DNA from: Octopus sinensis
Lineage: Eukaryota
Direction: 5' to 3'
NCBI RefSeq assembly: GCF_006345805.1
Contig: NC_043006.1
Coordinates: 22,692,001-22,756,000, forward strand
DNA length: 64,000 nucleotides
Made by a program: the position numbers and the translations under genes. Below the pieces are notes generated by a model. It searched no databases, was not told the origin of the DNA, and saw only the letters and a list, made by a program, of their open reading frames with translations. Every line of letters starts with the position of its first letter. Positions within the stretch are counted from its first letter, which is position 1. This document shows positions 1 through 45,598 of the stretch, piece by piece.

Positions 1-227
1 AGAGAGAAAAACACAGAAAGAAGGAGAGAAAAAAAAATGCGTGCAGTAGCTAACGAATCAACATGGCGATCTGATTTCGGCCAGAGGTCAAAGATCAAAC
101 ATGAGACGCGAGAGCGAAATAAGGGGAGATAATAGGGTTGATAAAAGGGTTGAGGGACCAGCTAATAGTGCGTAGGAGGGGTCTGGATGTGTGTATGTAT
201 AGGGTTGGTGTATGTATTAGTATGTAT

Positions 228-270
<43 letters not shown>

Positions 271-481
271 AGAGAGTATTAGTGTGTAGGATTGGTCTGG
301 ACGTGTGTATGTATGGGGTTGGTGTATGTATTAGTATGTATTAGTACGTATTGGTATGTATAAGTGTGTGTGTGTGTGTATGAGAGAGTATAAGTGCGTA
401 TGCGGGGTCTGGACGTGTGTATGTATAGGTTGGTGTATGTATTAGTATGTACTAGTATGTATTAGTACGTATTAGTATGTA

Positions 482-3400
482 TTAGTTGGTGTGTGTATTA
501 GTATGGCACATCATATGTGATGTGATGTGTAAAGTCATGTGGTGTAGTGAGGAGAAGAGGGGGAGAAGAGGGTGGAGAGAAGGGGAGGGGAATAAGAGGG
601 GGAGGAGGGGGGAAGAGGAGAGGATGGGGGAGGAGAGGGGGAAGAGGAGAGGATGGGGGAGGAGGGGGATGAAGGAGGAAAGAGGGAGAGGGGGAGAGAG
701 AAGGGGAGAGAGGGAGTGAGGGAGCAGAGGGAAGGGGAAGAGGGAGGGAGAAAGAGGGAAGAAGGGAAGGGGAGTAGGGGTGAAAGGATGAAGGACTGAA
801 GAAGTAGGGGTCGGGGGGAAAGGATAGATGAGGAGGGGGGGAGAGTTGAGACCAAATGGCGTATAAGAGCGAAGAGAGAAGATTAATTCCTGTTCACGGC
901 GCAAACGGGAATCCGGATGGCCTCTGTGTAAGGACAAACCGAACACAGATAGGTGTTGCAAGGAGTGACCGGTGGAGCGGAAATGGCGTGAGACCGGTGT
1001 GTCGTTCGCAAGGTGGATGTCACGAAGGTGTTCCGCGAACCGGTCAGCCAAGCGGCGTCCCGTTTGTCCGATGTACAAGGAATTGCAGAGAGAGCAAGAG
1101 ATGCAATAGATAATATTGCTGGAGGTGCAGGTGAAGGAGTGGATGATGGGATAGGGTCGATGGTGGGTGCTAGTGAGGCGGGTGGTGTTGGAGAGGTAAG
1201 GGCAAGTGCGGCAACGTGGGCGGGAGCAGGGGAACGAGCCGGGTTGGGAGGTAGGGTCAGGGAAGGAGCTATGGACCAAAAGGTCTCGAAGGTTGTGGGC
1301 TCGTTTGAAAGAGGGGAGGGGTCGGTTAGGGAAGAGGTGTGAAGTGGACGGGTCGGACTGGAGATGACGGAAAGCTCGAAGAATGGTGCGTTGGAGACGT
1401 AGGGTCGTGGGGTGGTAAGTGAGGGGAAAAGGGAGGCGGGAGACTACAGGGCGGGTTCGGGGAGAGAGAGCAGATACACAGTCCACGGACCGTGCTCTGG
1501 CAAGGGCGGTGTGGATAGTGGTGAGGGGGTATCGACGTAGGGTGAAGTGGTGAGCCATACGTTGAGACTGAGTCTCAAAGTCATGGTCGTCACTACAGAG
1601 CCTACGTAGACGGAGGAATTGGGAATAGGGGATGGAAAGCTTGGTGTGTTCTGGGTGGGAGGAAGAGAAGTTGAGGTATGAGTGTGAGTCTGTGTGTTTG
1701 TAGTGAATGGAGGTGGTAAGAGTGGAGTGAAGAATGCTAACCGAAATGTCGAGGAAGGAGACAGAGGTGTTGGAGATAGTGGAAGTGAAGTGGAGGGCTG
1801 GATGGAAAGATTGGACGAAAGAGAGGAAGGAATCTAGATGTTCGCGGGAGAGTGAGGTGGCACCGATAATGTCGTCAATGTAACGAACATATAGTTCAGG
1901 AGTGGGATCAGTGAAATTAGAGAATATTTGGGCCTCAACATAGCCAACGAACAGGTTCGCATAGTTGGGGCCCATTCGCGTTCCCATGGCCACTCCCGAG
2001 ACCTGATGGTAGAACTCGCCCGCGAACGAGAAGCAGTTCAGAGTAAGGACAAGTTCGGCCAGACGAATGAGTGTGGAGGTGTCATGTACAGGGTTAGAGC
2101 GGAGGTCAAGAAAGTGTCGAAGGGCCTGCAGTCCTTCGTGGTGAGGGATAACAGTATAGAGGCTTTGGATGTCCATAGTAAAAAGGATTTTGGAGGAGCC
2201 GGGAGGAAAGGAGAAAGAGTTGAAAAGCCGGAGAGCATGGTTGGTATCGTGGATGTGAGAGGGAAGAGATGCCACTAGGGGGGCAAGGACACGGTCGAGG
2301 TATTTAGAGATGAGCTCCGTGGGGCAGTTACAGGCGGAGACGATGGGGCGGCCAGGGTTGTTGGGTTTGTGGATTTTGGGGAGGAAGTAAATGGTGGGGT
2401 TACGTGGGGTTCGCACAATTAGGTTGGATGCGGTGCGGGGGAGACGGGAGGACGAGATGAGGTCTTGGACAGTAGAGGATACCGTCTGTTGGTAGCTACG
2501 TGTGGGGTTAGAGGGCAGAGGGGAATAGAAGGAGGTGTCATTGAGTTGGCGGAAAGCCTCGGCCCTATAGAGGTCCACGCGCCACACCACTACAGCTCCA
2601 CCCTTGTCAGCCGGTTTGATGATAATGTCAGCGCGCCGTTGGAGGGAACGAAGAGCCAAGAGCTCAGCCGGGGAGATGTTGAGGCGGCGTTGGCACCTGG
2701 AGAAGTTGAACCGCTCCAATGCACGCTGACAAGCGCCCGCGAAAAGATCCACTGCTAGGATCTGGCCAGGGGCAGGCGTCCACGGGGATGGTCGGCGGCC
2801 CAGGCCAGTGAAGCAGTCCTCTTCGTTGGGTGTGGGTGGCGAGTCGTGGTAATGCGCACCCAACCGGACACGGCGCACAAAGCTGTGGACATCAACTCGC
2901 GTCTGGAATTCCTTACAGGATGGAGTGAGGGGGGATGAAACGCAGACCCCTACCAAGGACGGAGCGTTCAGCCGCAGAGAGGGGAAGATCGGGGGGAATG
3001 GTAACAACAGACGGAAGTGGAGAAGGGGTGGGTGGAATAGAAGTAGAGGGGTGGTAGGTCTCGTGGAGGTCTGAGGGGGAGGGATTGGGGAGGTGTGTGG
3101 GGGGTGGGTTGGGCGGGGCAGTAGGGTTAGGTGTAGGTGGATGGAGCCTAACGGGAGGGGAGAAGGGGTTGTAGGGAGGGGCAGTGGGGTTAGGTGTGGG
3201 TGGATGGAGCCTATCGGGAGGGGAGAAGGGTGGTGGAGGAGTTGGGGTAGTGGCGTCGGGTAGGGTGGAATGGAAGAGTGATTGGAGTTTACGAAGTTTG
3301 GTATCAGAAAGAAATTGATGGAAGAGTTGATTCAAATGGATAATGAAGCGTAGCGTGTTTGGAGCATAGAGAGGCGGCAGAGAGAAGAAGGTGGAGAAAG

Positions 3401-3773
3401 CAGGAGGAAGAAGGCGGTTGATGGCATGTAGTTTGGAGAGATTGGAGCGAATGGTGGCCCGCATAAGGCGGTAAGATGTGGTGCGGAGTATGGGTAAGAT
3501 GGAAGAATCCGAGTGGAGAGCAGGGTGGAAGTGGAGGCGGAAACCTTTAGGGATGAGTCGGTGATGTAGGCAGCGGCTTAGGAAAGAGACATGGCTAGAG
3601 AAGCGGGTTTTTTTAAAAAGAAGTAGAGAGAGATTAACGGACGGCTGAAGGCAATATACAGGAAGCGAACGGAGATGATACTTCAAACGGTGATGGAGGG
3701 TGAGGAGGTAGGACCTAGGATCTGGCATGATGGGATAGCGGAAAAAAAACGTTCGAAAAAAAAAAAAAAACAA
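482..3773 (-). CDS. PLE polyprotein (N-terminal domain + RT + GIY-YIG) split by one frameshift
   Basis: ORF 2913-3773 (...SVLGRGLRFIP) and ORF 482-3007 (LTPSCKEFQTRVD...) join into one frame if one base is removed from the G6 run at 2929-2934. Confidence 0.85.
3116..3236 (-). repeat. 63-bp tandem duplication inside the PLE ORF (Pro-rich 21-aa repeat)
   Basis: PFSPPDRLHPPTPNPTAPP / PFSPPVRLHPPTPNPTAPP in ORF 2913-3773. Confidence 0.85.
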
Positions 3774-4449
3774 AAAAACAAAAATTATCGTATGAAAAAA
3801 ATAGAAAAAAAGGATAGCGAAAAAAGGGGAAAAAACAAACGTTCAAAAAAACAAAAAATAATAATCGTATGAAAAAACTAGATAAGTAAGCGATAGGGGC
3901 AGAAAAGACGGGGCAAACGGAAAAGGGAAAGAAAGAAGGGAAGCAGAGAGAGGGGGAGGCAAAAAAAGGGGGGTGCAGGCAGAGGAAACGGAGTATGGAC
4001 TTCCAGAGAGGGAAGAAAGACGGAAAGGAGAACAAAAATTCAGGAAAATGTGGAAAGCATGAAATGAATGTAAAAAAAGTGGTAATATAAGAGAAAATAA
4101 AAATACAACAAACGGGACAGTTTATGCGAACAAGTTCAAGGTTGAAAGTTCAAGGTGAGAAATGTGTAGACGTCGTGGTATATTTTTTAAGGATTTCACA
4201 TCAATGCAAAGTCACTTTGATCCGCGAAAGAGAGGTGCAGCCAATGGTAAGTATCCAAGAGGTAAAGAAAATCCAAGGTAGAGGTAAGTGTTGATAGTGG
4301 TATTGGTAGAATATAGGATGAAAGTGAGACCACGTGAGCGCATAATATATAACGGGAAGCTTTATGAAAATAAACAAAAGACGAAGGCAGGTGGAAAACA
4401 AACGAACAATTGTATTAGTATGGCGCTCAGGAAATATAAATAAAACAAG

Positions 4450-4487
4450 TCTTTAACGTTTCGAGCCTACGCTCTTCAACAGAAAGA
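4450..4487 (-). ncRNA. Minimal type I hammerhead ribozyme of the PLE pseudo-LTR region
   Basis: Minus strand reads TCTTT-CTGTTGA-A-GAGC GTAG GCTC-GAAA-CGT-T-AAAGA: helix I TCTTT/AAAGA, helix II GAGC/GCTC, core CUGNNGA...GAAA, palindromic ACGT helix III. A6 is replaced by U. Confidence 0.8.
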
Positions 4488-5174
4488 TACACAGAGAGAG
4501 AAAAACACAGAAAGAAGGAGAGAAAAAAAAATGCGTGCAGTAGCTAATGAATCAACATGGCGATCTGATTTCGGCCAGAGGTCAAAGATCAAACATGAGA
4601 TGCGAGAGCGAAATAAGGGGAGATAATAGGGTTGATAAAAGGGTTGAGGGACCAGCTAATAGTGCGTAGGAGGGGTCTGGATGTGTGTATGCATAGGGTT
4701 GGTGTATGTATTAGTATGTATAAGGGTGTGTGTGTGTGTGTGTATGAGAGAGTATTAGTGCGTAGGATTGGTCTGGACGTGCGTATGTATGGGGTTGGTG
4801 TATGTATTAGTATGTATTAGTACGTATTGGTATGTATAAGTGTGTGTGTGTGTATGAGAGAGTATAAGTGCGTATGCGGGGTCTGGACGTGTGTATGTAT
4901 AGGGTTGGTGTATGTATTAGTATGTACTAGTATGTATTAGTACGTATTAGTATGTATTAGTTGGTGTGTGTATTAGTATGGCACATCATATATATATATT
5001 AAATTAGAGATAAATCCACTATTAGGCAAATCAAACAGTGAAAAACATAAACTAAAAAATTAATTAATATAATATACAAAATATATAAAATATAAAATTC
5101 AAAATTTAAATTATTTAAATTTAAAGCTAAAAATAAAAAACTTTTTTTTAATTATTAATTTATACTTATAAATT

Positions 5175-5214
<40 letters not shown>

Positions 5215-5388
5215 TTTTTTATTATTTTATAATTGAGGTTATATATCTGTTTACATATATATTGGCTTATTTCATTCATTTACATGAATCACTTACACAT
5301 ATGTTTGTAATCAATTAATAAATAGATATAACTGAATGTTTACTGGCTGAAGTTTGTTGATTGTTTATCCTCTCCATTTTCTTACTTG

Positions 5389-5434
<46 letters not shown>

Positions 5435-5579
5435 CAAACTTCTTTCAGTTTCTATCTACCAAATCCACTCACAAGTCTTTGGTCAGTGCAAGGCTATAGT
5501 AGAAGACACTTGCCAAAGGTATCATACAGTGAGACCGAACCCAAAACCAAGTGGTTGGGAAGCAAGCGTCTTACCATGC

Positions 5580-5950
5580 AACCATCATCATCATCATCAT
5601 CGTTTAACGTCCGTTCTCCATGCTAGCATGGGTTGGACGGTTCGACCGGGGATCTGGGAAGCCAGAAGGCTGCACCAGGCTCCAGTCTTATCTGGCAATG
5701 TTTCTACAGCTGGATGCCCTTCCTAACGCCAACCACTCCGTGAGTGTAGTGGGTGCTTTTTACGTGCCACCTGCACAGGTGCCAGGTGAGGCTGGCAACG
5801 GCCACGGTTGGATTGGTGTATTTTACGTGCCACCGGCACGGAAGCCAGCCGAGGCGGTGCTGGCATCGGCCACGAGTCGGATAGTGCTTTTTACGTACCA
5901 CCAGACCAGGGATCCTGGCTGGTTCAATTCGATTTCGATTTCGATTTCGC
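5580..5950 (-). mobile_element. SINE-like family C (GGTTGGCGTTAGGAAGGGCATCC core, (GAT)n tail); representative copy
   Basis: Near-identical copy at 45200-45510; others at ~8470-8680(+), 23445-23590, 24890-25110(+), 28530-28680, 36345-36580, 62750-62850(+). Confidence 0.85.
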
Positions 5951-6068
5951 TTGCCCCAATATGTCTTGACTGTCTATTTTTCATGTCTGACCACTGAAAC
6001 TGCAAAATCTAACTGGAACTTACTGAACAACAACAACAACAACAAAATCAACACAAAATATTACTTAC

Positions 6069-7487
6069 TCAGGTCTTCAATCGATGGAATCTCTTCCAAT
6101 AAGAGCATTTCATCAGACAAGTGAGAAGAAAGAAATGACTCGTTATTACTTAAATCATTTAAAACAGTAGAAAGTGGAGTTCTTGCAGCAAGTTCGTCAG
6201 TTAAACATCCACTGCAATAATCTTTACTGTCATCATAGTCTTGATTTGTACAGATATGTAAACATTCCTTACTGGCAGATAATTCTCTCATACTTTCAGT
6301 ATATCCTACTACACTGCCGGAGAGCTCTTCCCTACTACTAAATATTACTTCACTGCTTCCTAATTTTTCCTTACTTCCATACAATCCTTCCCTACTGCTA
6401 TCCATTCCTCTCAGACTTCTACGTAACCCTTTTCTACTTCTATGTGATCCTTTTCTACTGGCACATCGTGCTCTTCTGTCATCTAATACCTTTCTACTGT
6501 CATCTGATCCTCTTCTACTGTCATCTAATCCCTTTATACTGTCATCTGATCCTTTTCTACTGCCATCTGATCCCATTCTACTGTCCTCTGATTCCTTTCT
6601 ACTGCTAACTGATCCCTTTCTACTGCTAACTGATCCCTTTCTACTAACATCTGATCCCCTTCTACTGTCATATGATCCTTTTCTACTGTCACATGATCCT
6701 TTTCTACTGTCATGTGATCCTTTTCTACTCCTATGTGATCCCTTTCTACTGATATCTGATCCTTTTCTACTGCCATCTGATCCTTCCCTGCCAACATCTG
6801 ATCCTTTTCTATTGACATCTATTTCTTTTCTACTGCCATCTGATCCTTCCCTGCCTTTCTGTACTTTTTTTATACCTTCTCTAAGACTATCACAGCTATG
6901 AGATGCTTTTCTAATGCAAAGTAACAGTTCCCGATCACCATATTCGTCTTCCTTATTGCAAGGAAATCTTTCCTTAACACTGCTTAATTCTTCCTTAATG
7001 TTAGGTAATCTTTCCTTATCGACACATAATTCTTCCCTACTACTAAGTGCTTCTTCCTTACTACTATATACTTCTTCCCTCCTTTCACTTAAATCTTCCA
7101 GGCTACCAAATATTACTTCTGTATGCCCAGTTTTTCTTTCTATACTAGTAACTGATCCTTCTCCATGGCCAAATGCTTCTTCAGCATTTTCTTCTCTGCT
7201 GGTTTGTGATTTATCCTCACTGGTTTGTAATATTTCTCTACTGCCAGGTAATGCTACTTTACTGGCAAGTGATCCATTTTGACTGATAGATAATTCTTCC
7301 GTAGTGTCAAGTAACACTTCAAGAAGCTGATTTTCTCTGACATTGATGTCTTTGCTGAGATCTTGGCGTTTTAGGTTTTCATCTTCCAGTGTTCTTTCTG
7401 CTTGATCTGAAGATTTCTGGTATTCCACATCTTTAACAGCTACTTTTGACTTTTCCAAGTTATCTTTCTGGCTCTCATCATCAACAA
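6069..7487 (-). CDS. XRRA1: XRRA1-like gene, exon 8 (large low-complexity exon with 7-aa repeat array)
   Basis: Acceptor TTTCTAATTTTAG before 7487, donor GTAAGT after 6069; 1419 nt open, phase 1-1, fits the phase-1 end of exon 7. No recalled XRRA1 similarity within this exon, so inclusion is inferred. Confidence 0.7.
6340..6860 (-). repeat. Coding 21-bp minisatellite (SRKGSxx)n
   Basis: Plus-strand unit TGATCCTTTTCTACTGTCATC, more than 20 degenerate copies, in frame. Confidence 0.95.
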
Positions 7488-36148: not shown

Positions 36149-36799
36149 CTGGTAATACACAAAAGAAGTGGTTTTTCAGTCAGGGCTTTTTTTTTTTAAT
36201 AATATGCTTCAGACTAAAGTAGATGTGCTATAGTGACAGTGTGCATGTGTGCGCAAAAATTGATGGTAGTCATCAGAGTAGATGTGCTAAGGTTACAGTG
36301 TACTTGTGAATGCAACAACTGATGATAGTGATCAAAGTATATCATCATCATCATCATCATCATCATCGTTTAATGTCCGTTTTCCATGCTAGCATGGGTT
36401 GGACGGTTCAACTGGGGTCTGGGGAGCCAGTAGGCTGCGCCAGGCCCAGTCTGATCTGGCAGTGTTTCTACAGCTGGATGCCCTTCCTAACGCCAACCAC
36501 TCCGAGAGTGTAGTGGGTGCTTTTTATGTGCCACCTGCACAGGTGCCAGACGAGGCTGGCAACGGCCACAATCGGATGGTGACCATATCATTATGATAAG
36601 CAGTGAGAACAGTGTAAAATTCTGTAAAATCACTGTGTGCCTCACTAGCTTCCAGTATTTAGTTCAAGACCTACTGTTGGAGGGGAAAAGCAGCAAATAG
36701 CCACTGCTATATCATTATGTTAACAAAGAAAGTAAACATTACATTTACCACTTCTGTAAGATAGTGACAAGCAAAGCAAACAAATGCCAACCTTTATGT

Positions 36800-39249: not shown

Positions 39250-39850
39250 CTAGTACAAATTATTATAGAAATATTTTCAGCCATTCAATTTGGGAGAGAA
39301 TTTTGTTATGAAGTATTTTCCCATATTTTTCCTGAAGGAGGTGTCATTCTTTGGGCATTTTTAGAAGGGAAAGATCTTAAATTGTCCTTCTCCACATGTA
39401 TCTAGGTGTTTACTCAGTGGAATCTTTCGCAGTTCCTCCTGTTGGACATGTTGTCGGTGAATTCTGGCTCATTGGCATAAAGAATTTCCAGTTTCGCCTA
39501 TATAATTCTCCTTACATGTGGGGCAAGTTATGCAGTTCATTACATTCTGCGTCTTACAGTTCATGTCTGCATTTACTTTGAATATGTGGCCACTCTTAAA
39601 TTTTATTTGTTTGTCTCCCTCTATATATTTGTAGGTGGGGTTACTGCTCATCCCACATCTACCAACTCTGCATTCTTTTACAAAGAATTCGGTTTTAGTC
39701 GCTGATGAGAATTTTGCTCTTGTTAGTTGTTTCTTCAGATTTTTGTCTTGTCATTTACTGTTTTTTATGCAATATTCGTTTAATATGTTTCCCATTTTTG
39801 GGGCTTCTGCCACTGATTTTCTTGTCTTTATGGGGTCCTTTTATAAATAT
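39250..39850 (-). mobile_element. Degenerate Penelope-like fragment (GIY-YIG)
   Basis: ORF 39469-39651 CKTQNVMNCITCPTCKENYIGETG. Confidence 0.75.
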
Positions 39851-40689: not shown

Positions 40690-42800
40690 GTACTTTGGGG
40701 TCTTATTTATCGTATATTTTTATATATTTATCTATAAATATACAAACCATTCTCACAAATTTTTCAGGGCATCCTAGCTTTTTTAGGATCTCCCAAAGTG
40801 CAATTCTATTGATAGAATCAAATGCTTTTGTTAGGTCAATGAAAACTTGGTATAAGTCCATATCCTCTTCGATGCACTTCTCTTGCAACTGTCTAGCTGA
40901 AAATATCATATCCATAGTACCCTGACTATCCCTAAACCCACATTGCGATTCTGGTAGAACCTCATCAGCAATGTGCAGAAGCAATCTATCCAGCATTGCC
41001 CTACAGAAGACCTTTCCAGCAACAGCTAACAGACAGATGCTGTGATAATTATCACAGACATCCTTTCCACCTTTAGATTTATATAGTATCTCCATAGTTG
41101 CATCACACTAATCCGGAAGAACCTCTTCACTTTGCCAAACCCTCTGAATCACATCTGTCAACATTGCACAGAGATGATCACCACCATATTTATATATCCC
41201 TGCACCTAGTCCATCTATGCCAGGGGCCTTTCCATTGTTCAATTTCCTGATTGCTGCCTTTATTTCAGCCAGGTTTGGAACTTCTGCTATAAGATGTTTT
41301 AATGGTCTCTCGGGTATATTATCAAGAAAAGAGAGATCAACTTCAGTGGGTCTATTGAGCAACTCATCAAAATGTTCTTTCCATCTCCCAACAATATCTT
41401 TAGGATTTGTTAATAATTCTGTGCCATCCTTGCTCTGAAGTGGCACAACCTTTGATGAAACTGGTCCATAAACTTTTTTCAAGAGAGAGTAAAAAAGTTT
41501 GGAATTGTTAGCATTTGAAGCTTCTTGGCTTTCATCGCATCTATCACTCAATTTTTCTGCATCATCCATAGCTTCCTCGGCACTTGCTTTTTCAGCCTTG
41601 ATATATGTAGCCACTGTACTGTTCATTGACATGTCAACATTTTGCAACATGTTAAATGCCTTTCGTTTCTCCTCTAAGATAAGATTAACTTCTTCATCAT
41701 TATCGCCAAACCAATCTTGGTGTTTTTTTTACAACAAAGCCAAGAATGTTACTACAAATCTTGTACACTCTTTCTTTGAATGACTTCCATCACAGGACAA
41801 ATTATTTATCTCACTCACAAACTCATTGCGTACTGACGGAATCTTAAGCTTATTCACATCGATCTATTTAGGCAATTTGTCACTATTTGCTCTAACATTA
41901 GACTTGACAACAGGATTCACCTTGGCATGCAAAAGCCTATGATAAGTCCAGCACTCTGCACTACACACCACTCGTACAATAACCAAGTCCCTAATATCTC
42001 ATTTCCTGGTGAGGATGTAATCTGTAAGATGCTGTTTCTTAGAACCAGGGTGCATCCATGTCATTTTATAGTTATTCTTTAGTCGAAACATTGTATTCAT
42101 GACACACAAGTTCATTTCTACGCACATTTGTAACAGTAGCAAACCATTACTGTTGGAACTCTCAACCCCATGCTTTCCTAGGACACCCCAAATCTCCCAA
42201 TCGGCACCAACGGGAGCATTAAAATCACCCGAAATGACAACTTAGTCATCATGGGGGATATTGCGTATAATCTCTGTAAGTGATAGATAGAAGGCAAGTT
42301 TATCATCCTCTGATGAATTCTTAGTTGGAGCATATGCACTTATGAGTGTTGCATAGTGACCTTTTCTTAATGGAAGTCTTAAAGACATCAAACAATCCAA
42401 ATGACCACATGGTAGTTCCTCAAGTTTTGAAGCCAGGGTGGTTTTGATAGCAAATCCCACTGCTGATTCTCTCTTATAGGTCTTTTCTCTACCGCTCCAA
42501 AAGAAATGATATCCAGCAGATTATTCTATGAAATTCCCCTTTCCATGAATTCTTGTTTCAGCTAATGCTACAACATCCGTATCATACCGCTGTAACTCTT
42601 TTGCAACAAGCGCGGATTTTCTCTCTGGACGAGACTTCAAACAATCATTGTCTAACAACGTTCAAACATTCCAGCATCCTATATTCATAGGCTTGCATCT
42701 TAACTTAGATTTACTCACAGTTGCAGGACGATGACCGGATCCAGGGACACCTGCCAGGCCAGACCACAGAACAAAATGTTCCAGAGACCTTTTTGCCATT
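40690..42800 (-). mobile_element. Degenerate RTE (BovB-like) LINE: AP endonuclease + RT
   Basis: IGCWNV...RPERKSALVAKEL...AETR; GKAPGIDGL; CGFR...GTMDMIF...QEKC...FIDLTKAFDSINR; many stops. Confidence 0.9.
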
Positions 42801-45194: not shown

Positions 45195-45598
45195 ATGTAT
45201 ATCATCATCATCATCATCATCGTTTAACGTCCGTTCTCCATGCTAGCATGGGTTGGACGGTTCAACTGGGGTCTGGGAAGCCAGAAGGCTGCACCAGGCT
45301 CCAGTCTTATCTGGCAATGTTTCTACAGCTGGATGCCCTTCCTAACGCCAACCACTCCGTGAGTGTAGTGGGTGCTTTTTACGTGCCACCTGCACAGGTG
45401 CCAGGTGAGGCTGGAAACGGCCACGGTCGGATTGGTGTATTTTATGTGCCACCGGCACGGAAGCCAGTGGAGGCGGCGCTGGCATCGGCCACAAGTCGGA
45501 TAGTGCTTTATATATATATATGTATCATCATCATCATCATCATCGTTTGATACATATATATATATAATATATATATATATAAATATATATATATATTT

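What the first reader, a model, noticed from the sequence alone, without database searches (positions are those of the whole stretch)
4450..4487. Hammerhead ribozyme with an A6U core change, lying sense to the host gene transcript
Seen: a complete minimal type I hammerhead fold on the minus strand, with CUGUUGA instead of CUGANGA. Established: Penelope-like elements carry minimal hammerheads that cleave as dimers through a palindromic helix III. Inference: the element is co-oriented with XRRA1 and lies downstream of exon 8, so the ribozyme, and a second copy expected just before position 1, would be in XRRA1 pre-mRNA if the gene continues. It could then cut the nascent transcript, and A6U could be an attenuating or family-wide variant.
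Basis: partly seen in the sequence, partly recalled or inferred. Interest (0 to 1): 0.7.

Follow-up and report, generated by a model that had tools for sequence, protein, structure and literature searches.

The report
Octopus retrotransposon hammerhead with U6 core
This is the small hammerhead-ribozyme motif of a Penelope-like retrotransposon sitting, in the sense direction, in an intron of the octopus XRRA1-like gene; its odd core base (U where A is expected) is shared by every sampled copy of this transposon family, so it is not a private mutation, but whether it still cuts RNA is untested.

Summary
Window 4487..4450 (minus strand) reads UCUUU-CUGUUGA-A-GAGC/GUAG/GCUC-GAAA-CGU-U-AAAGA. It matches the minimal hammerhead of Penelope-like elements (PLEs) in every feature except A6→U. 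My descriptor expects 0.005 chance hits per window. A covariance model built only from relatives gives E=1.5e-6.

The window is Octopus sinensis chromosome CM016868.1.
- The PLE is a partial tandem with one frameshift.
- It lies sense-oriented in the 14-kb intron after exon 8 of the XRRA1-like gene.
- The predicted second hammerhead, 8 nt before window position 1, exists and is identical, U6 included.

New result: four further independent insertions of this family all carry U6. They are in O. sinensis and O. bimaculoides, and one is orthologous, so it predates the species split. Of 44 descriptor hits in related PLE loci, 43 have A6, one G6 and none U6. Within the family, hammerhead-defining positions change far less than the flank (4/150 vs 60/436, p=5e-5).

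So U6 is a family-wide variant that appears to be selectively maintained, not decay and not a local adaptation to XRRA1. Cleavage is untested. Published A6 data predict strong attenuation in Mg2+. Cutting of XRRA1 pre-mRNA is possible but unlikely to matter.

The parts
4450..4487 (-). Minimal type I hammerhead motif of the upstream pLTR copy; core is CUGUUGA
   Evidence: exact sequence, descriptor hit, covariance model at 32.4 bits and E=1.5e-6
4479..4479 (-). Core position 6, U instead of A
   Evidence: A6 is invariant in the 24 relatives used for the model, and 43 of 44 descriptor hits in relatives have A6
4454..4455 (-). Predicted scissile bond, 3' of U17 (4455)
   Evidence: Position follows from hammerhead numbering applied; cleavage was not tested
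4342..4991 (-). Upstream 5'-truncated PLE copy (pLTR): 3'UTR tandem repeats, hammerhead and 3' terminus, joined head-to-tail to the full unit at 4342/4341
   Evidence: equals unit positions 3826-4494; 5 substitutions in about 645 nt, all CpG-type
1..4341 (-). Full-length PLE unit (4495 nt). Its last 153 nt, including the second hammerhead, lie beyond window position 1 at L083 49388-49541
2913..3773 (-). N-terminal ORF of the PLE protein (Met at 3728)
   Evidence: homologous to residues 1-204 of P0003
482..3007 (-). Reverse transcriptase plus GIY-YIG endonuclease ORF (homology 2932..842; low-complexity read-through tail 841..482)
   Evidence: RVT_1 E=1e-8, GIY-YIG weak; best relatives 54-55% identical at E about 1e-245
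2925..2935 (-). Frameshift separating the N-terminal ORF from the RT ORF. Relatives have a single ORF, so this copy is no longer coding-competent
   Evidence: homology to P0003 and P0005 switches frame at 2931/2932
1..516 (-). 3'UTR of the full unit, with tandem repeats of about 100 nt and a (CA)n run; duplicated at 4495-4991
6069..7487 (-). Exon 8 of the XRRA1-like gene (LOC115216585); GT donor at 6068-6067
   Evidence: the protein continues ...IPSIEDL|KLFMNLSK in the next exon, 8.1 kb beyond the window start
1..6068 (-). Part of the 14.2-kb intron 8 that holds the PLE; the PLE starts 1.08 kb after the donor
   Evidence: next exon at L083 57535

Best explanation
The motif is the 3'-terminal mini-hammerhead of an endonuclease-encoding Penelope-like retrotransposon. 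The insertion is the usual partial tandem, so the hammerhead occurs twice, 4494 nt apart, in the same orientation. The whole element lies sense-oriented in intron 8 of the Octopus sinensis XRRA1-like gene.

The U at core position 6 was inherited from the source element. It is the ancestral state of this octopus PLE family, which has kept an otherwise intact hammerhead through repeated rounds of transposition.

Inferred mechanism: the RNA serves the element, not the host. It is kept as a hammerhead-shaped 3'UTR structure that pairs with a second copy through the ACGU palindrome. With U6 it self-cleaves only weakly, if at all, under cellular Mg2+, and any activity probably needs the dimer plus the PLE protein or another cofactor. 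Transposition does not depend on fast cleavage, so the U6 lineage persisted. Any effect on XRRA1 pre-mRNA is incidental and probably negligible.

Shown: identity, position, orientation, the second copy, family-wide U6, and excess conservation of hammerhead-defining positions.
Inferred: attenuated activity, an element-level role, and no host effect.
For: Identity and context:
- Sequence and anatomy.
- Chance expectation 0.005 per window.
- Relatives-only covariance model, E=1.5e-6.
- Helices I and II covary in relatives: 72 compensatory cells vs 23.5 in shuffles.
- RT/GIY-YIG ORFs and the pLTR repeat.
- The window is 100% identical to the O. sinensis locus L083.
- The second hammerhead at L083 49395-49432 is identical, U6 included.

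Family-wide U6:
- Further copies at L083 72760-72723 and about 75.0 kb, and at L084 17632, 36516 and about 66.3 kb, all read CUGU.
- The Osin_D and Obim_G copies are orthologous at 95.5% identity, so U6 predates the species split.
- The two pLTRs of this insertion differ by only about 0.8%.
- Non-CpG changes against the family consensus: 4/150 at hammerhead-constrained positions, 60/436 in the flank (p=5.5e-5) and 7/33 at free positions N7, 9a, loop II and H17 (p=7e-4).

Expected activity:
- Of 44 descriptor hits in related PLE loci, 43 have A6, one G6 and none U6.
- A6C lowers Mg2+ cleavage by more than 10^4-fold but not Mn2+ cleavage (PMC7151607).
- Every other single or double mutant of the CUGA turn region was low in activity; only the C3-G8 pair swap was tolerated (PMC9901934).
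- Metazoan PLE hammerheads cleave poorly, and only as dimers (PMC4209133).
- In the Anolis PLE, catalytic hammerhead mutants still insert, and cleavage needs the protein (PMC11167929).
- U6 adds a pair to a competing fold: monomer -10.2 vs -7.8 kcal/mol for the hammerhead 2D, against -8.7 for an A6 version.
Against: - No cleavage data exist for any U6 hammerhead in the sources I could read, so 'attenuated' is extrapolated from A6C and general mutagenesis.
- The constraint test rests on five insertions from 180 kb of two genomes, uses a consensus as ancestor, and its flank alignment is less certain than the gap-free hammerhead block.
- Strong conservation of the catalytic nucleotides other than A6 would be easier to explain if catalysis mattered, which favours the 'active variant' rival.
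- This particular copy has a frameshift, so nothing here shows that the family is still mobile.
Confidence: 0.5

Rival explanations
1. U6 is a fully functional natural core variant. The dimeric U6 hammerhead, perhaps helped by the PLE protein or by Mn2+-like ions, cleaves PLE transcripts efficiently. In sense-intronic copies such as this one it also cuts host pre-mRNA.
For: - All other catalytic nucleotides, G10.1-C11.1, the 9a nucleotide and the ACGU palindrome are kept across the family, while N7, H17 and loop II vary.
- An unrelated PLE (L035:2790-2827) combines U6 with the compensated U3-A8 pair.
- A pyrimidine at position 6 (C6) is active with Mn2+ (PMC7151607).
- PLE hammerhead cleavage can depend on protein (PMC11167929).
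Against: - Mutations in the CUGA turn gave low activity in comprehensive mutagenesis (PMC9901934).
- C6 is more than 10^4-fold down in Mg2+ (PMC7151607).
- Of 44 descriptor hits in related PLE loci, 43 keep A6.
- U6 stabilises a non-catalytic fold.
- Even canonical metazoan PLE hammerheads cleave poorly (PMC4209133).
Confidence: 0.22
2. The motif is catalytically dead. It is conserved only as a structured binding site or folding element of the PLE 3'UTR, for example for recognition by the element's reverse transcriptase.
For: - Conservation covers stems and core alike.
- Two other invariant blocks lie just downstream, ACTAATACA and CACCTG.CTTCGTCTTTTGT, so the whole 3' end looks functional.
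- Insertion in vitro does not need hammerhead catalysis (PMC11167929).
Against: A pure binding site would not need GAAA, G8, A9, G12 and a non-G at position 17 to stay hammerhead-compatible. Nothing here shows protein binding.
Confidence: 0.18
3. It is a neutral relic. The family lost hammerhead function when A6 mutated, and the apparent constraint is a sampling or alignment artefact of a few related copies.
For: - Only five insertions were sampled.
- Most changes in old copies are CpG decay.
- This copy carries a frameshift.
- Mutant hammerheads in repeats are common (PMC3088659).
Against: - U6 is already present in an insertion older than the species split and still present in one about 0.8% diverged.
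- The core shows no other non-CpG change over that span, while the flank differs from the family consensus at about 14% of sites by non-CpG changes.
Confidence: 0.08
4. It is a host-level regulator. The intronic sense ribozyme has been co-opted to tune XRRA1 expression by co-transcriptional intron cleavage, and U6 was selected to slow it down.
For: - Sense orientation within intron 8.
- There is precedent for an intronic ribozyme competing with splicing, at CPEB3 (PMC10919898).
Against: - U6 is not specific to this locus.
- Two other copies in the same gene are antisense.
- The insertion is young, with about 0.8% pLTR divergence against 4.5% between the species. Its presence at the orthologous O. 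bimaculoides site could not be shown because of an assembly gap.
Confidence: 0.02

Closest known systems
Minimal hammerheads of Penelope-like elements (Cervera & de la Pena 2014, PMC4209133; Lunse, Weinberg & Breaker 2017, cited in PMC6765202)
   Same: - Type I topology with no stem-loop III.
- Palindromic 15.2-16.2, so helix III forms only between two copies.
- An extra nucleotide between A9 and G10.1, and a G10.1-C11.1 pair.
- A short helix I.
- One copy in each pLTR of an RT/GIY-YIG element.
   Different: Core position 6 is U, not A, in every sampled copy of this family. Descriptor searches that fix the catalytic boxes would miss such families.
Natural A6C hammerheads (phage Bcep176; Perreault 2011, PMC3088659; Naghdi 2020, PMC7151607)
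   Same: A pyrimidine replaces the conserved A6 in a naturally occurring hammerhead that is otherwise consensus.
   Different: Those are C6, monomeric and bacterial or phage, and have been tested: weak in Mg2+, good in Mn2+. This one is U6, dimer-dependent, in an animal retrotransposon, and untested.
Poseidon PLE of Anolis carolinensis (PAc; PMC11167929)
   Same: A canonical endonuclease-encoding PLE with a pLTR hammerhead. It shows that insertion in vitro does not need hammerhead catalysis and that cleavage needs the protein.
   Different: The PAc hammerhead has a consensus core and overlaps the ORF start. Here it lies about 110 nt from the 3' end of the unit.
Intronic CPEB3 HDV-like ribozyme (PMC10919898)
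   Same: A self-cleaving motif in the sense strand of an intron, whose cleavage can compete with co-transcriptional splicing.
   Different: It is a different ribozyme class, a single conserved host element rather than a transposon copy, and its activity is demonstrated.
Animal non-LTR retrozymes (PMC7229834; bioRxiv 10.64898/2026.07.22.740005)
   Same: Hammerhead-bearing repeats related to PLE pLTRs. They are reported to be under-represented in introns.
   Different: Those are short, non-autonomous tandem repeats with canonical type I hammerheads. This is an autonomous-type PLE unit with ORFs.

Membership tests
Hammerhead ribozyme (type I) | Three-way junction with helix I open and helix II closed by a loop | tested here: met
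   Helix I is 5 bp and helix II is 4 bp plus a GUAG loop. Both helices covary in relatives.
Hammerhead ribozyme (type I) | Core box C3 U4 G5 A6 N7 G8 A9 | tested here: not met
   The sequence is CUGUUGA, with position 6 = U (window 4479). A6 is invariant in the 24 model sequences.
Hammerhead ribozyme (type I) | G12 A13 A14, the A15.1-U16.1 pair, and H17 not G | tested here: met
   GAAA at 4462-4459; U16.1 at 4456; H17 = U at 4455. The 15.1-16.1 pair can form only between two copies.
Hammerhead ribozyme (type I) | Site-specific self-cleavage | not testable with these tools
The literature on A6 variants predicts a strong reduction in Mg2+ (PMC7151607, PMC9901934).
Hammerhead ribozyme (type I) | Match to the Rfam hammerhead models | tested here: inconclusive
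   No hit even at E<=10. A canonical A6 PLE mini-hammerhead is missed as well.
PLE mini-hammerhead (min-HHR) | No loop III; palindromic 15.2-16.2 that allows a dimeric helix III | tested here: met
   A-C-G-U is contiguous at 4459-4456 (AACGUU in this copy).
PLE mini-hammerhead (min-HHR) | An unpaired nucleotide between A9 and G10.1, and a G10.1-C11.1 pair | tested here: met
   A at 4475; G 4474 pairs with C 4463. The same holds in nearly all relatives. The features are listed in PMC4209133.
PLE mini-hammerhead (min-HHR) | Present in both flanking repeats of a PLE, same orientation as the ORF | tested here: met
   Window 4487..4450 and L083 49395-49432, flanking the RT/EN ORFs.
PLE mini-hammerhead (min-HHR) | Similarity in sequence and structure to hammerheads of related PLEs | tested here: met
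   Model R1 was built without the window; 32.4 bits, E=1.5e-6, full length.
Penelope-like element, endonuclease-encoding | Reverse transcriptase followed by a C-terminal GIY-YIG endonuclease | tested here: met
   Pfam RVT_1 E=1e-8; the GIY-YIG match is below cut-off. There are 819 homologues, the best at E=1.9e-245, carrying RVT_1 and in some cases GIY-YIG annotations.
Penelope-like element, endonuclease-encoding | Partial tandem (pLTR) organisation | tested here: met
   A 650-nt upstream partial copy joins head-to-tail to a 4495-nt unit.
XRRA1 (host gene) | Orthology to X-ray radiation resistance-associated protein 1 | tested here: met
   - Spliced exons are 99% identical to O. sinensis XP_036362238.1.
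- The sister isoform is named 'X-ray radiation resistance-associated protein 1-like' by NCBI.
- The Capitella homologue is named XRRA1 by UniRef.
These names are database annotations, not tested function.

The most novel reading that the evidence does not exclude
A6U is a genuine, selectively maintained natural variant of the hammerhead catalytic core. It would be the first U6 hammerhead. It would retain cleavage under special conditions (dimer, PLE protein or non-Mg2+ ions) and has supported transposition of an octopus PLE lineage since before the O. sinensis / O. bimaculoides split. Sense-intronic copies such as this one would then nick host pre-mRNAs at a low, tolerated rate.
Probability: 0.2. 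Interest if true: 0.65.

Novelty: new variant of a known kind. Interest (0 to 1): 0.45.

Why it matters
A6 is one of the nucleotides that defines the hammerhead. Searches for PLE hammerheads fix the catalytic boxes, so families with a changed core are invisible to them.

A retrotransposon lineage that kept a U6 hammerhead intact through several transposition rounds gives a natural test of two open points. The first is whether hammerhead catalysis is needed for PLE mobility at all. The second is how much core variation the ribozyme tolerates in vivo.

It also gives a concrete, easily assayed pair (U6 versus U6A) in a dimer-dependent context. For the host gene the finding is probably of no consequence.

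Tried and rejected
- Rfam scans, at gathering and at E<=10, found nothing. I set this aside because a canonical relative is missed too.
- My first attempt to name the host gene used concatenated exons including the low-complexity exon. It returned only plant LRR proteins. An exhaustive HMMER search with the LRR exons alone solved it.
- Look-up of isoform X3 (P0165) was not on record. Isoform X2 (P0315) worked.
- I considered 'private decay mutation of an old copy' first, because of the frameshift and a first estimate of 96% repeat identity. I rejected it because a gapped alignment shows about 0.8% substitutions, the second pLTR copy also has U6, and independent copies share it.
- Minimum-energy cofolding of two copies gives only a trivial extended duplex, so it is uninformative about the double hammerhead.
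- The empty-site test in O. bimaculoides failed for this insertion and for copy C. Both orthologous sites fall in assembly gaps.
- Lunse et al. 2017 (PMC5785218) is not held.
- A search for 'A6U' with hammerhead found no relevant paper.
- A chance motif at window 44750-44700 (CUGCCGA) has no support from the model.

Full report
**1. What is in the sequence**

On the minus strand, window 4487..4450 reads UCUUU CUGUUGA A GAGC-GUAG-GCUC GAAA CGU U AAAGA, and the string is unique in the window.
- In hammerhead numbering: helix I is 5 bp; C3-A9 = 4482-4476 with U at position 6 (4479); one extra A (4475).
- Helix II is 4 bp, starts with G10.1-C11.1, and has a GUAG loop.
- G12-A15.1 = 4462-4459; C15.2-G16.2-U16.1 follow with no loop III; H17 = U (4455).
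- The predicted cut is therefore 4455|4454.
- A descriptor of this architecture with position 6 free gives 0.02 hits per dinucleotide-shuffled window, and 0.005 with U6.
- Rfam reports nothing even at E<=10. It also misses a canonical A6 mini-hammerhead of a related element, so this is a limit of the models, not evidence against the motif.
- The monomer's minimum-energy fold is not the hammerhead junction. U4-G5-U6-U7 pair with A14-A15.1-C15.2-G16.2.

**2. The element around it**

- The minus strand carries an ORF with reverse transcriptase and a GIY-YIG-like C-terminus (482-3007). Upstream, in another frame, lies an N-terminal ORF (2913-3773).
- The best database relatives are single-ORF PLE proteins, 54-55% identical at E about 1e-245.
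- Homology to them switches frame at 2931/2932, so this copy has one frameshift.
- Window 1-516 is repeated at 4495-4991.
- This is the usual PLE partial tandem. A 5'-truncated copy (4991..4342) is joined head-to-tail to a full unit that starts at 4341.

**3. Relatives**

- I fetched 82 related PLE loci.
- The descriptor with position 6 free finds 44 hammerheads in them: 43 with A6, one with G6 in a degenerate copy, and none with U6.
- Nearly all have the extra A after A9, G10.1-C11.1, and CGUC, CGUU or GCUU in place of helix III. In many loci they lie roughly 100-250 nt after the ORF. These are the features Cervera and de la Pena list for PLE mini-hammerheads (PMC4209133).
- Helices I and II covary strongly in these relatives: 85% of cells are paired, and 72 cells show compensatory changes against 23.5 in shuffles.
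- A covariance model built from 24 of them, without the window, finds the window motif full length at 32.4 bits, E=1.5e-6. The only mismatch to an invariant column is position 6.

**4. Where the window comes from, and the host gene**

- LRR-coding exons with canonical splice sites lie on the minus strand.
- Joined together, they match O. sinensis XP_036362238.1 at 99%. A sister isoform (P0315) is named 'X-ray radiation resistance-associated protein 1-like'.
- The P0315 locus (L083, 98 kb, GCA_006345805.1 chromosome CM016868.1) is 100% identical to window 1-49387 in reverse orientation. Window x corresponds to L083 position 49388-x.
- The large exon (window 7487..6069) ends at a GTAAGT donor. 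The protein then continues for about 475 residues in exons starting 14.2 kb downstream.
- The PLE is therefore inside intron 8, 1.08 kb after the donor, in the sense orientation.

**5. The second copy, and the origin of U6**

- L083 49395-49432, 8-45 nt beyond window position 1, holds an identical hammerhead, CUGUUGA included. The repeat runs on to the element's 3' end at L083 49541, where a (TA)n tract begins.
- The two pLTR copies differ by 5 substitutions in about 645 nt, all CpG-type, plus microsatellite length changes.
- U6 therefore came with the source RNA.

The same locus and the orthologous O. bimaculoides locus (L084) contain further copies of the family's 3' end:

| Copy | Position | Core reading |
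|---|---|---|
| Osin_C | L083 72760-72723 | CUGUCGA, GUA |
| Osin_D | L083 about 75.0 kb | CUGUCAA |
| Obim_E | L084 17632-17669 | CUGUGGA |
| Obim_F | L084 36516-36479 | CUGUUAA |
| Obim_G | L084 about 66.3 kb | CUGUCAA |

- Osin_D and Obim_G lie in colinear flanks and are 95.5% identical, so they are one insertion older than the species split.
- That makes five independent insertions, all with U6. U6 is the family's ancestral state and not an adaptation of this locus. Osin_C and Osin_D are antisense to the gene.

**6. Constraint**

- Measured against the family consensus, non-CpG changes are 4/150 at hammerhead-defining positions (stems and core, U6 included).
- They are 60/436 in the adjacent 3' flank (Fisher p=5.5e-5), and 7/33 at the positions a hammerhead leaves free: N7, 9a, loop II and H17 (p=7e-4).
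- The four 'constrained' changes are two at the outermost helix I position and two G8-to-A changes. The latter are CpG-type if N7 was ancestrally C.
- The two youngest independent copies differ only at N7 and H17 within the motif.
- This is the pattern expected if a hammerhead-shaped RNA with U6 has been under purifying selection in the master lineage.
- The sample is small and the flank alignment is less secure.

**7. Likely function**

What the literature says:
- Every other single or double mutant of the CUGA turn region gave low activity in comprehensive mutagenesis; only the C3-G8 pair swap was tolerated (PMC9901934).
- Natural C6 variants have low but detectable activity (PMC3088659).
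- C6 variants are more than 10^4-fold impaired in Mg2+ yet nearly normal in Mn2+ (PMC7151607).
- Canonical metazoan PLE hammerheads cleave poorly and only as dimers (PMC4209133).
- In the Anolis PLE, catalytic mutants still insert, cleavage needs the protein, and no cleavage ends were seen in RNA-seq (PMC11167929).

What I computed:
- U6 adds a base pair to a competing fold. The monomer is at -10.2 kcal/mol against -7.8 for the hammerhead secondary structure, whereas an A6 version sits at -8.7.

My best reading:
- The motif is maintained for the element's own RNA biology and cleaves weakly at best.
- Cleavage of XRRA1 pre-mRNA would need pairing of two copies 4.5 kb apart and is probably negligible.
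- A fully active variant, a purely structural element and a neutral relic remain as rivals.

**8. Novelty**

- PLE mini-hammerheads, their dimer mechanism and intronic transposon copies are known.
- Within the papers I could search, a family-wide U6 core is not described. One unrelated metagenomic PLE (L035:2790-2827) shows U6 together with the compensated U3-A8 pair, which hints that the variant recurs.
- I rate it a new variant of a known kind, of moderate interest, with a cheap decisive experiment (U6 versus U6A dimers).

Noticed in passing
L035:2790-2827 (+): A metagenomic PLE (43% protein identity) has a 3'UTR hammerhead with core UUGUCAA. That is the known compensated U3-A8 pair plus U at position 6, a second and unrelated U6 case.
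   Followed up: partly
window 4992-5003; L083 49542-49760; 3' ends of all copies in alignment A7: Every copy of this PLE family abuts a (TA)n microsatellite at its 3' end, and this insertion has (TA)n on both sides. This suggests a (TA)n target preference or a templated tail.
   Followed up: partly
L083 85280-85325 (+) and L084 59137-59092 (-): A different mini-hammerhead family lies in the same gene and has a consensus A6 core (CUGAAGA). Octopus therefore also carries canonical PLE hammerheads.
   Followed up: partly
L002 3475-3442, L008 1091-1056, L011 2292-2259, L030 4597-4562: In several related PLE loci the second hammerhead copy is inverted relative to the ORF (inverted pLTR arrangement) rather than direct.
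   Followed up: no
window 39385-39741 (-): A GIY-YIG endonuclease fragment of another, distant PLE (24% identity to this one). No hammerhead was detected nearby.
   Followed up: no
window 40706-42520 (-): ORFs of a non-LTR retrotransposon (EEP-type endonuclease and reverse transcriptase) lie in an upstream intron of the same gene.
   Followed up: no
window 5700-5920 (-), also 36490-36663, 45345-45524 and many sites in L083 and L084: A SINE-like repeat with three copies of a GGTGGCACGTAAAAAGCACC-type box. It is very abundant in both octopus loci at 75-90% identity.
   Followed up: no
window 124-516 and 4618-4991 (-): The PLE 3'UTR consists of tandem repeats of about 100 nt with an internal (CA)n run. 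The run differs by 18 nt between the two pLTR copies.
   Followed up: partly
window 482-841 (-): The RT/EN ORF reads about 115 codons past the point where homologues end, through a CT-rich low-complexity tract. The usual stop appears to be missing.
   Followed up: no
window 6500-6900 (-), exon 8: The SRKGS-type repeat block of the XRRA1-like exon 8 is longer in the window than in isoform X3, and differs greatly from O. bimaculoides. This disordered repeat is evolving quickly.
   Followed up: no
L002:6553-6586: The Rfam 15 hammerhead models do not detect a canonical A6 PLE mini-hammerhead even at E<=10. Rfam-based annotation will therefore miss this whole class.
   Followed up: yes
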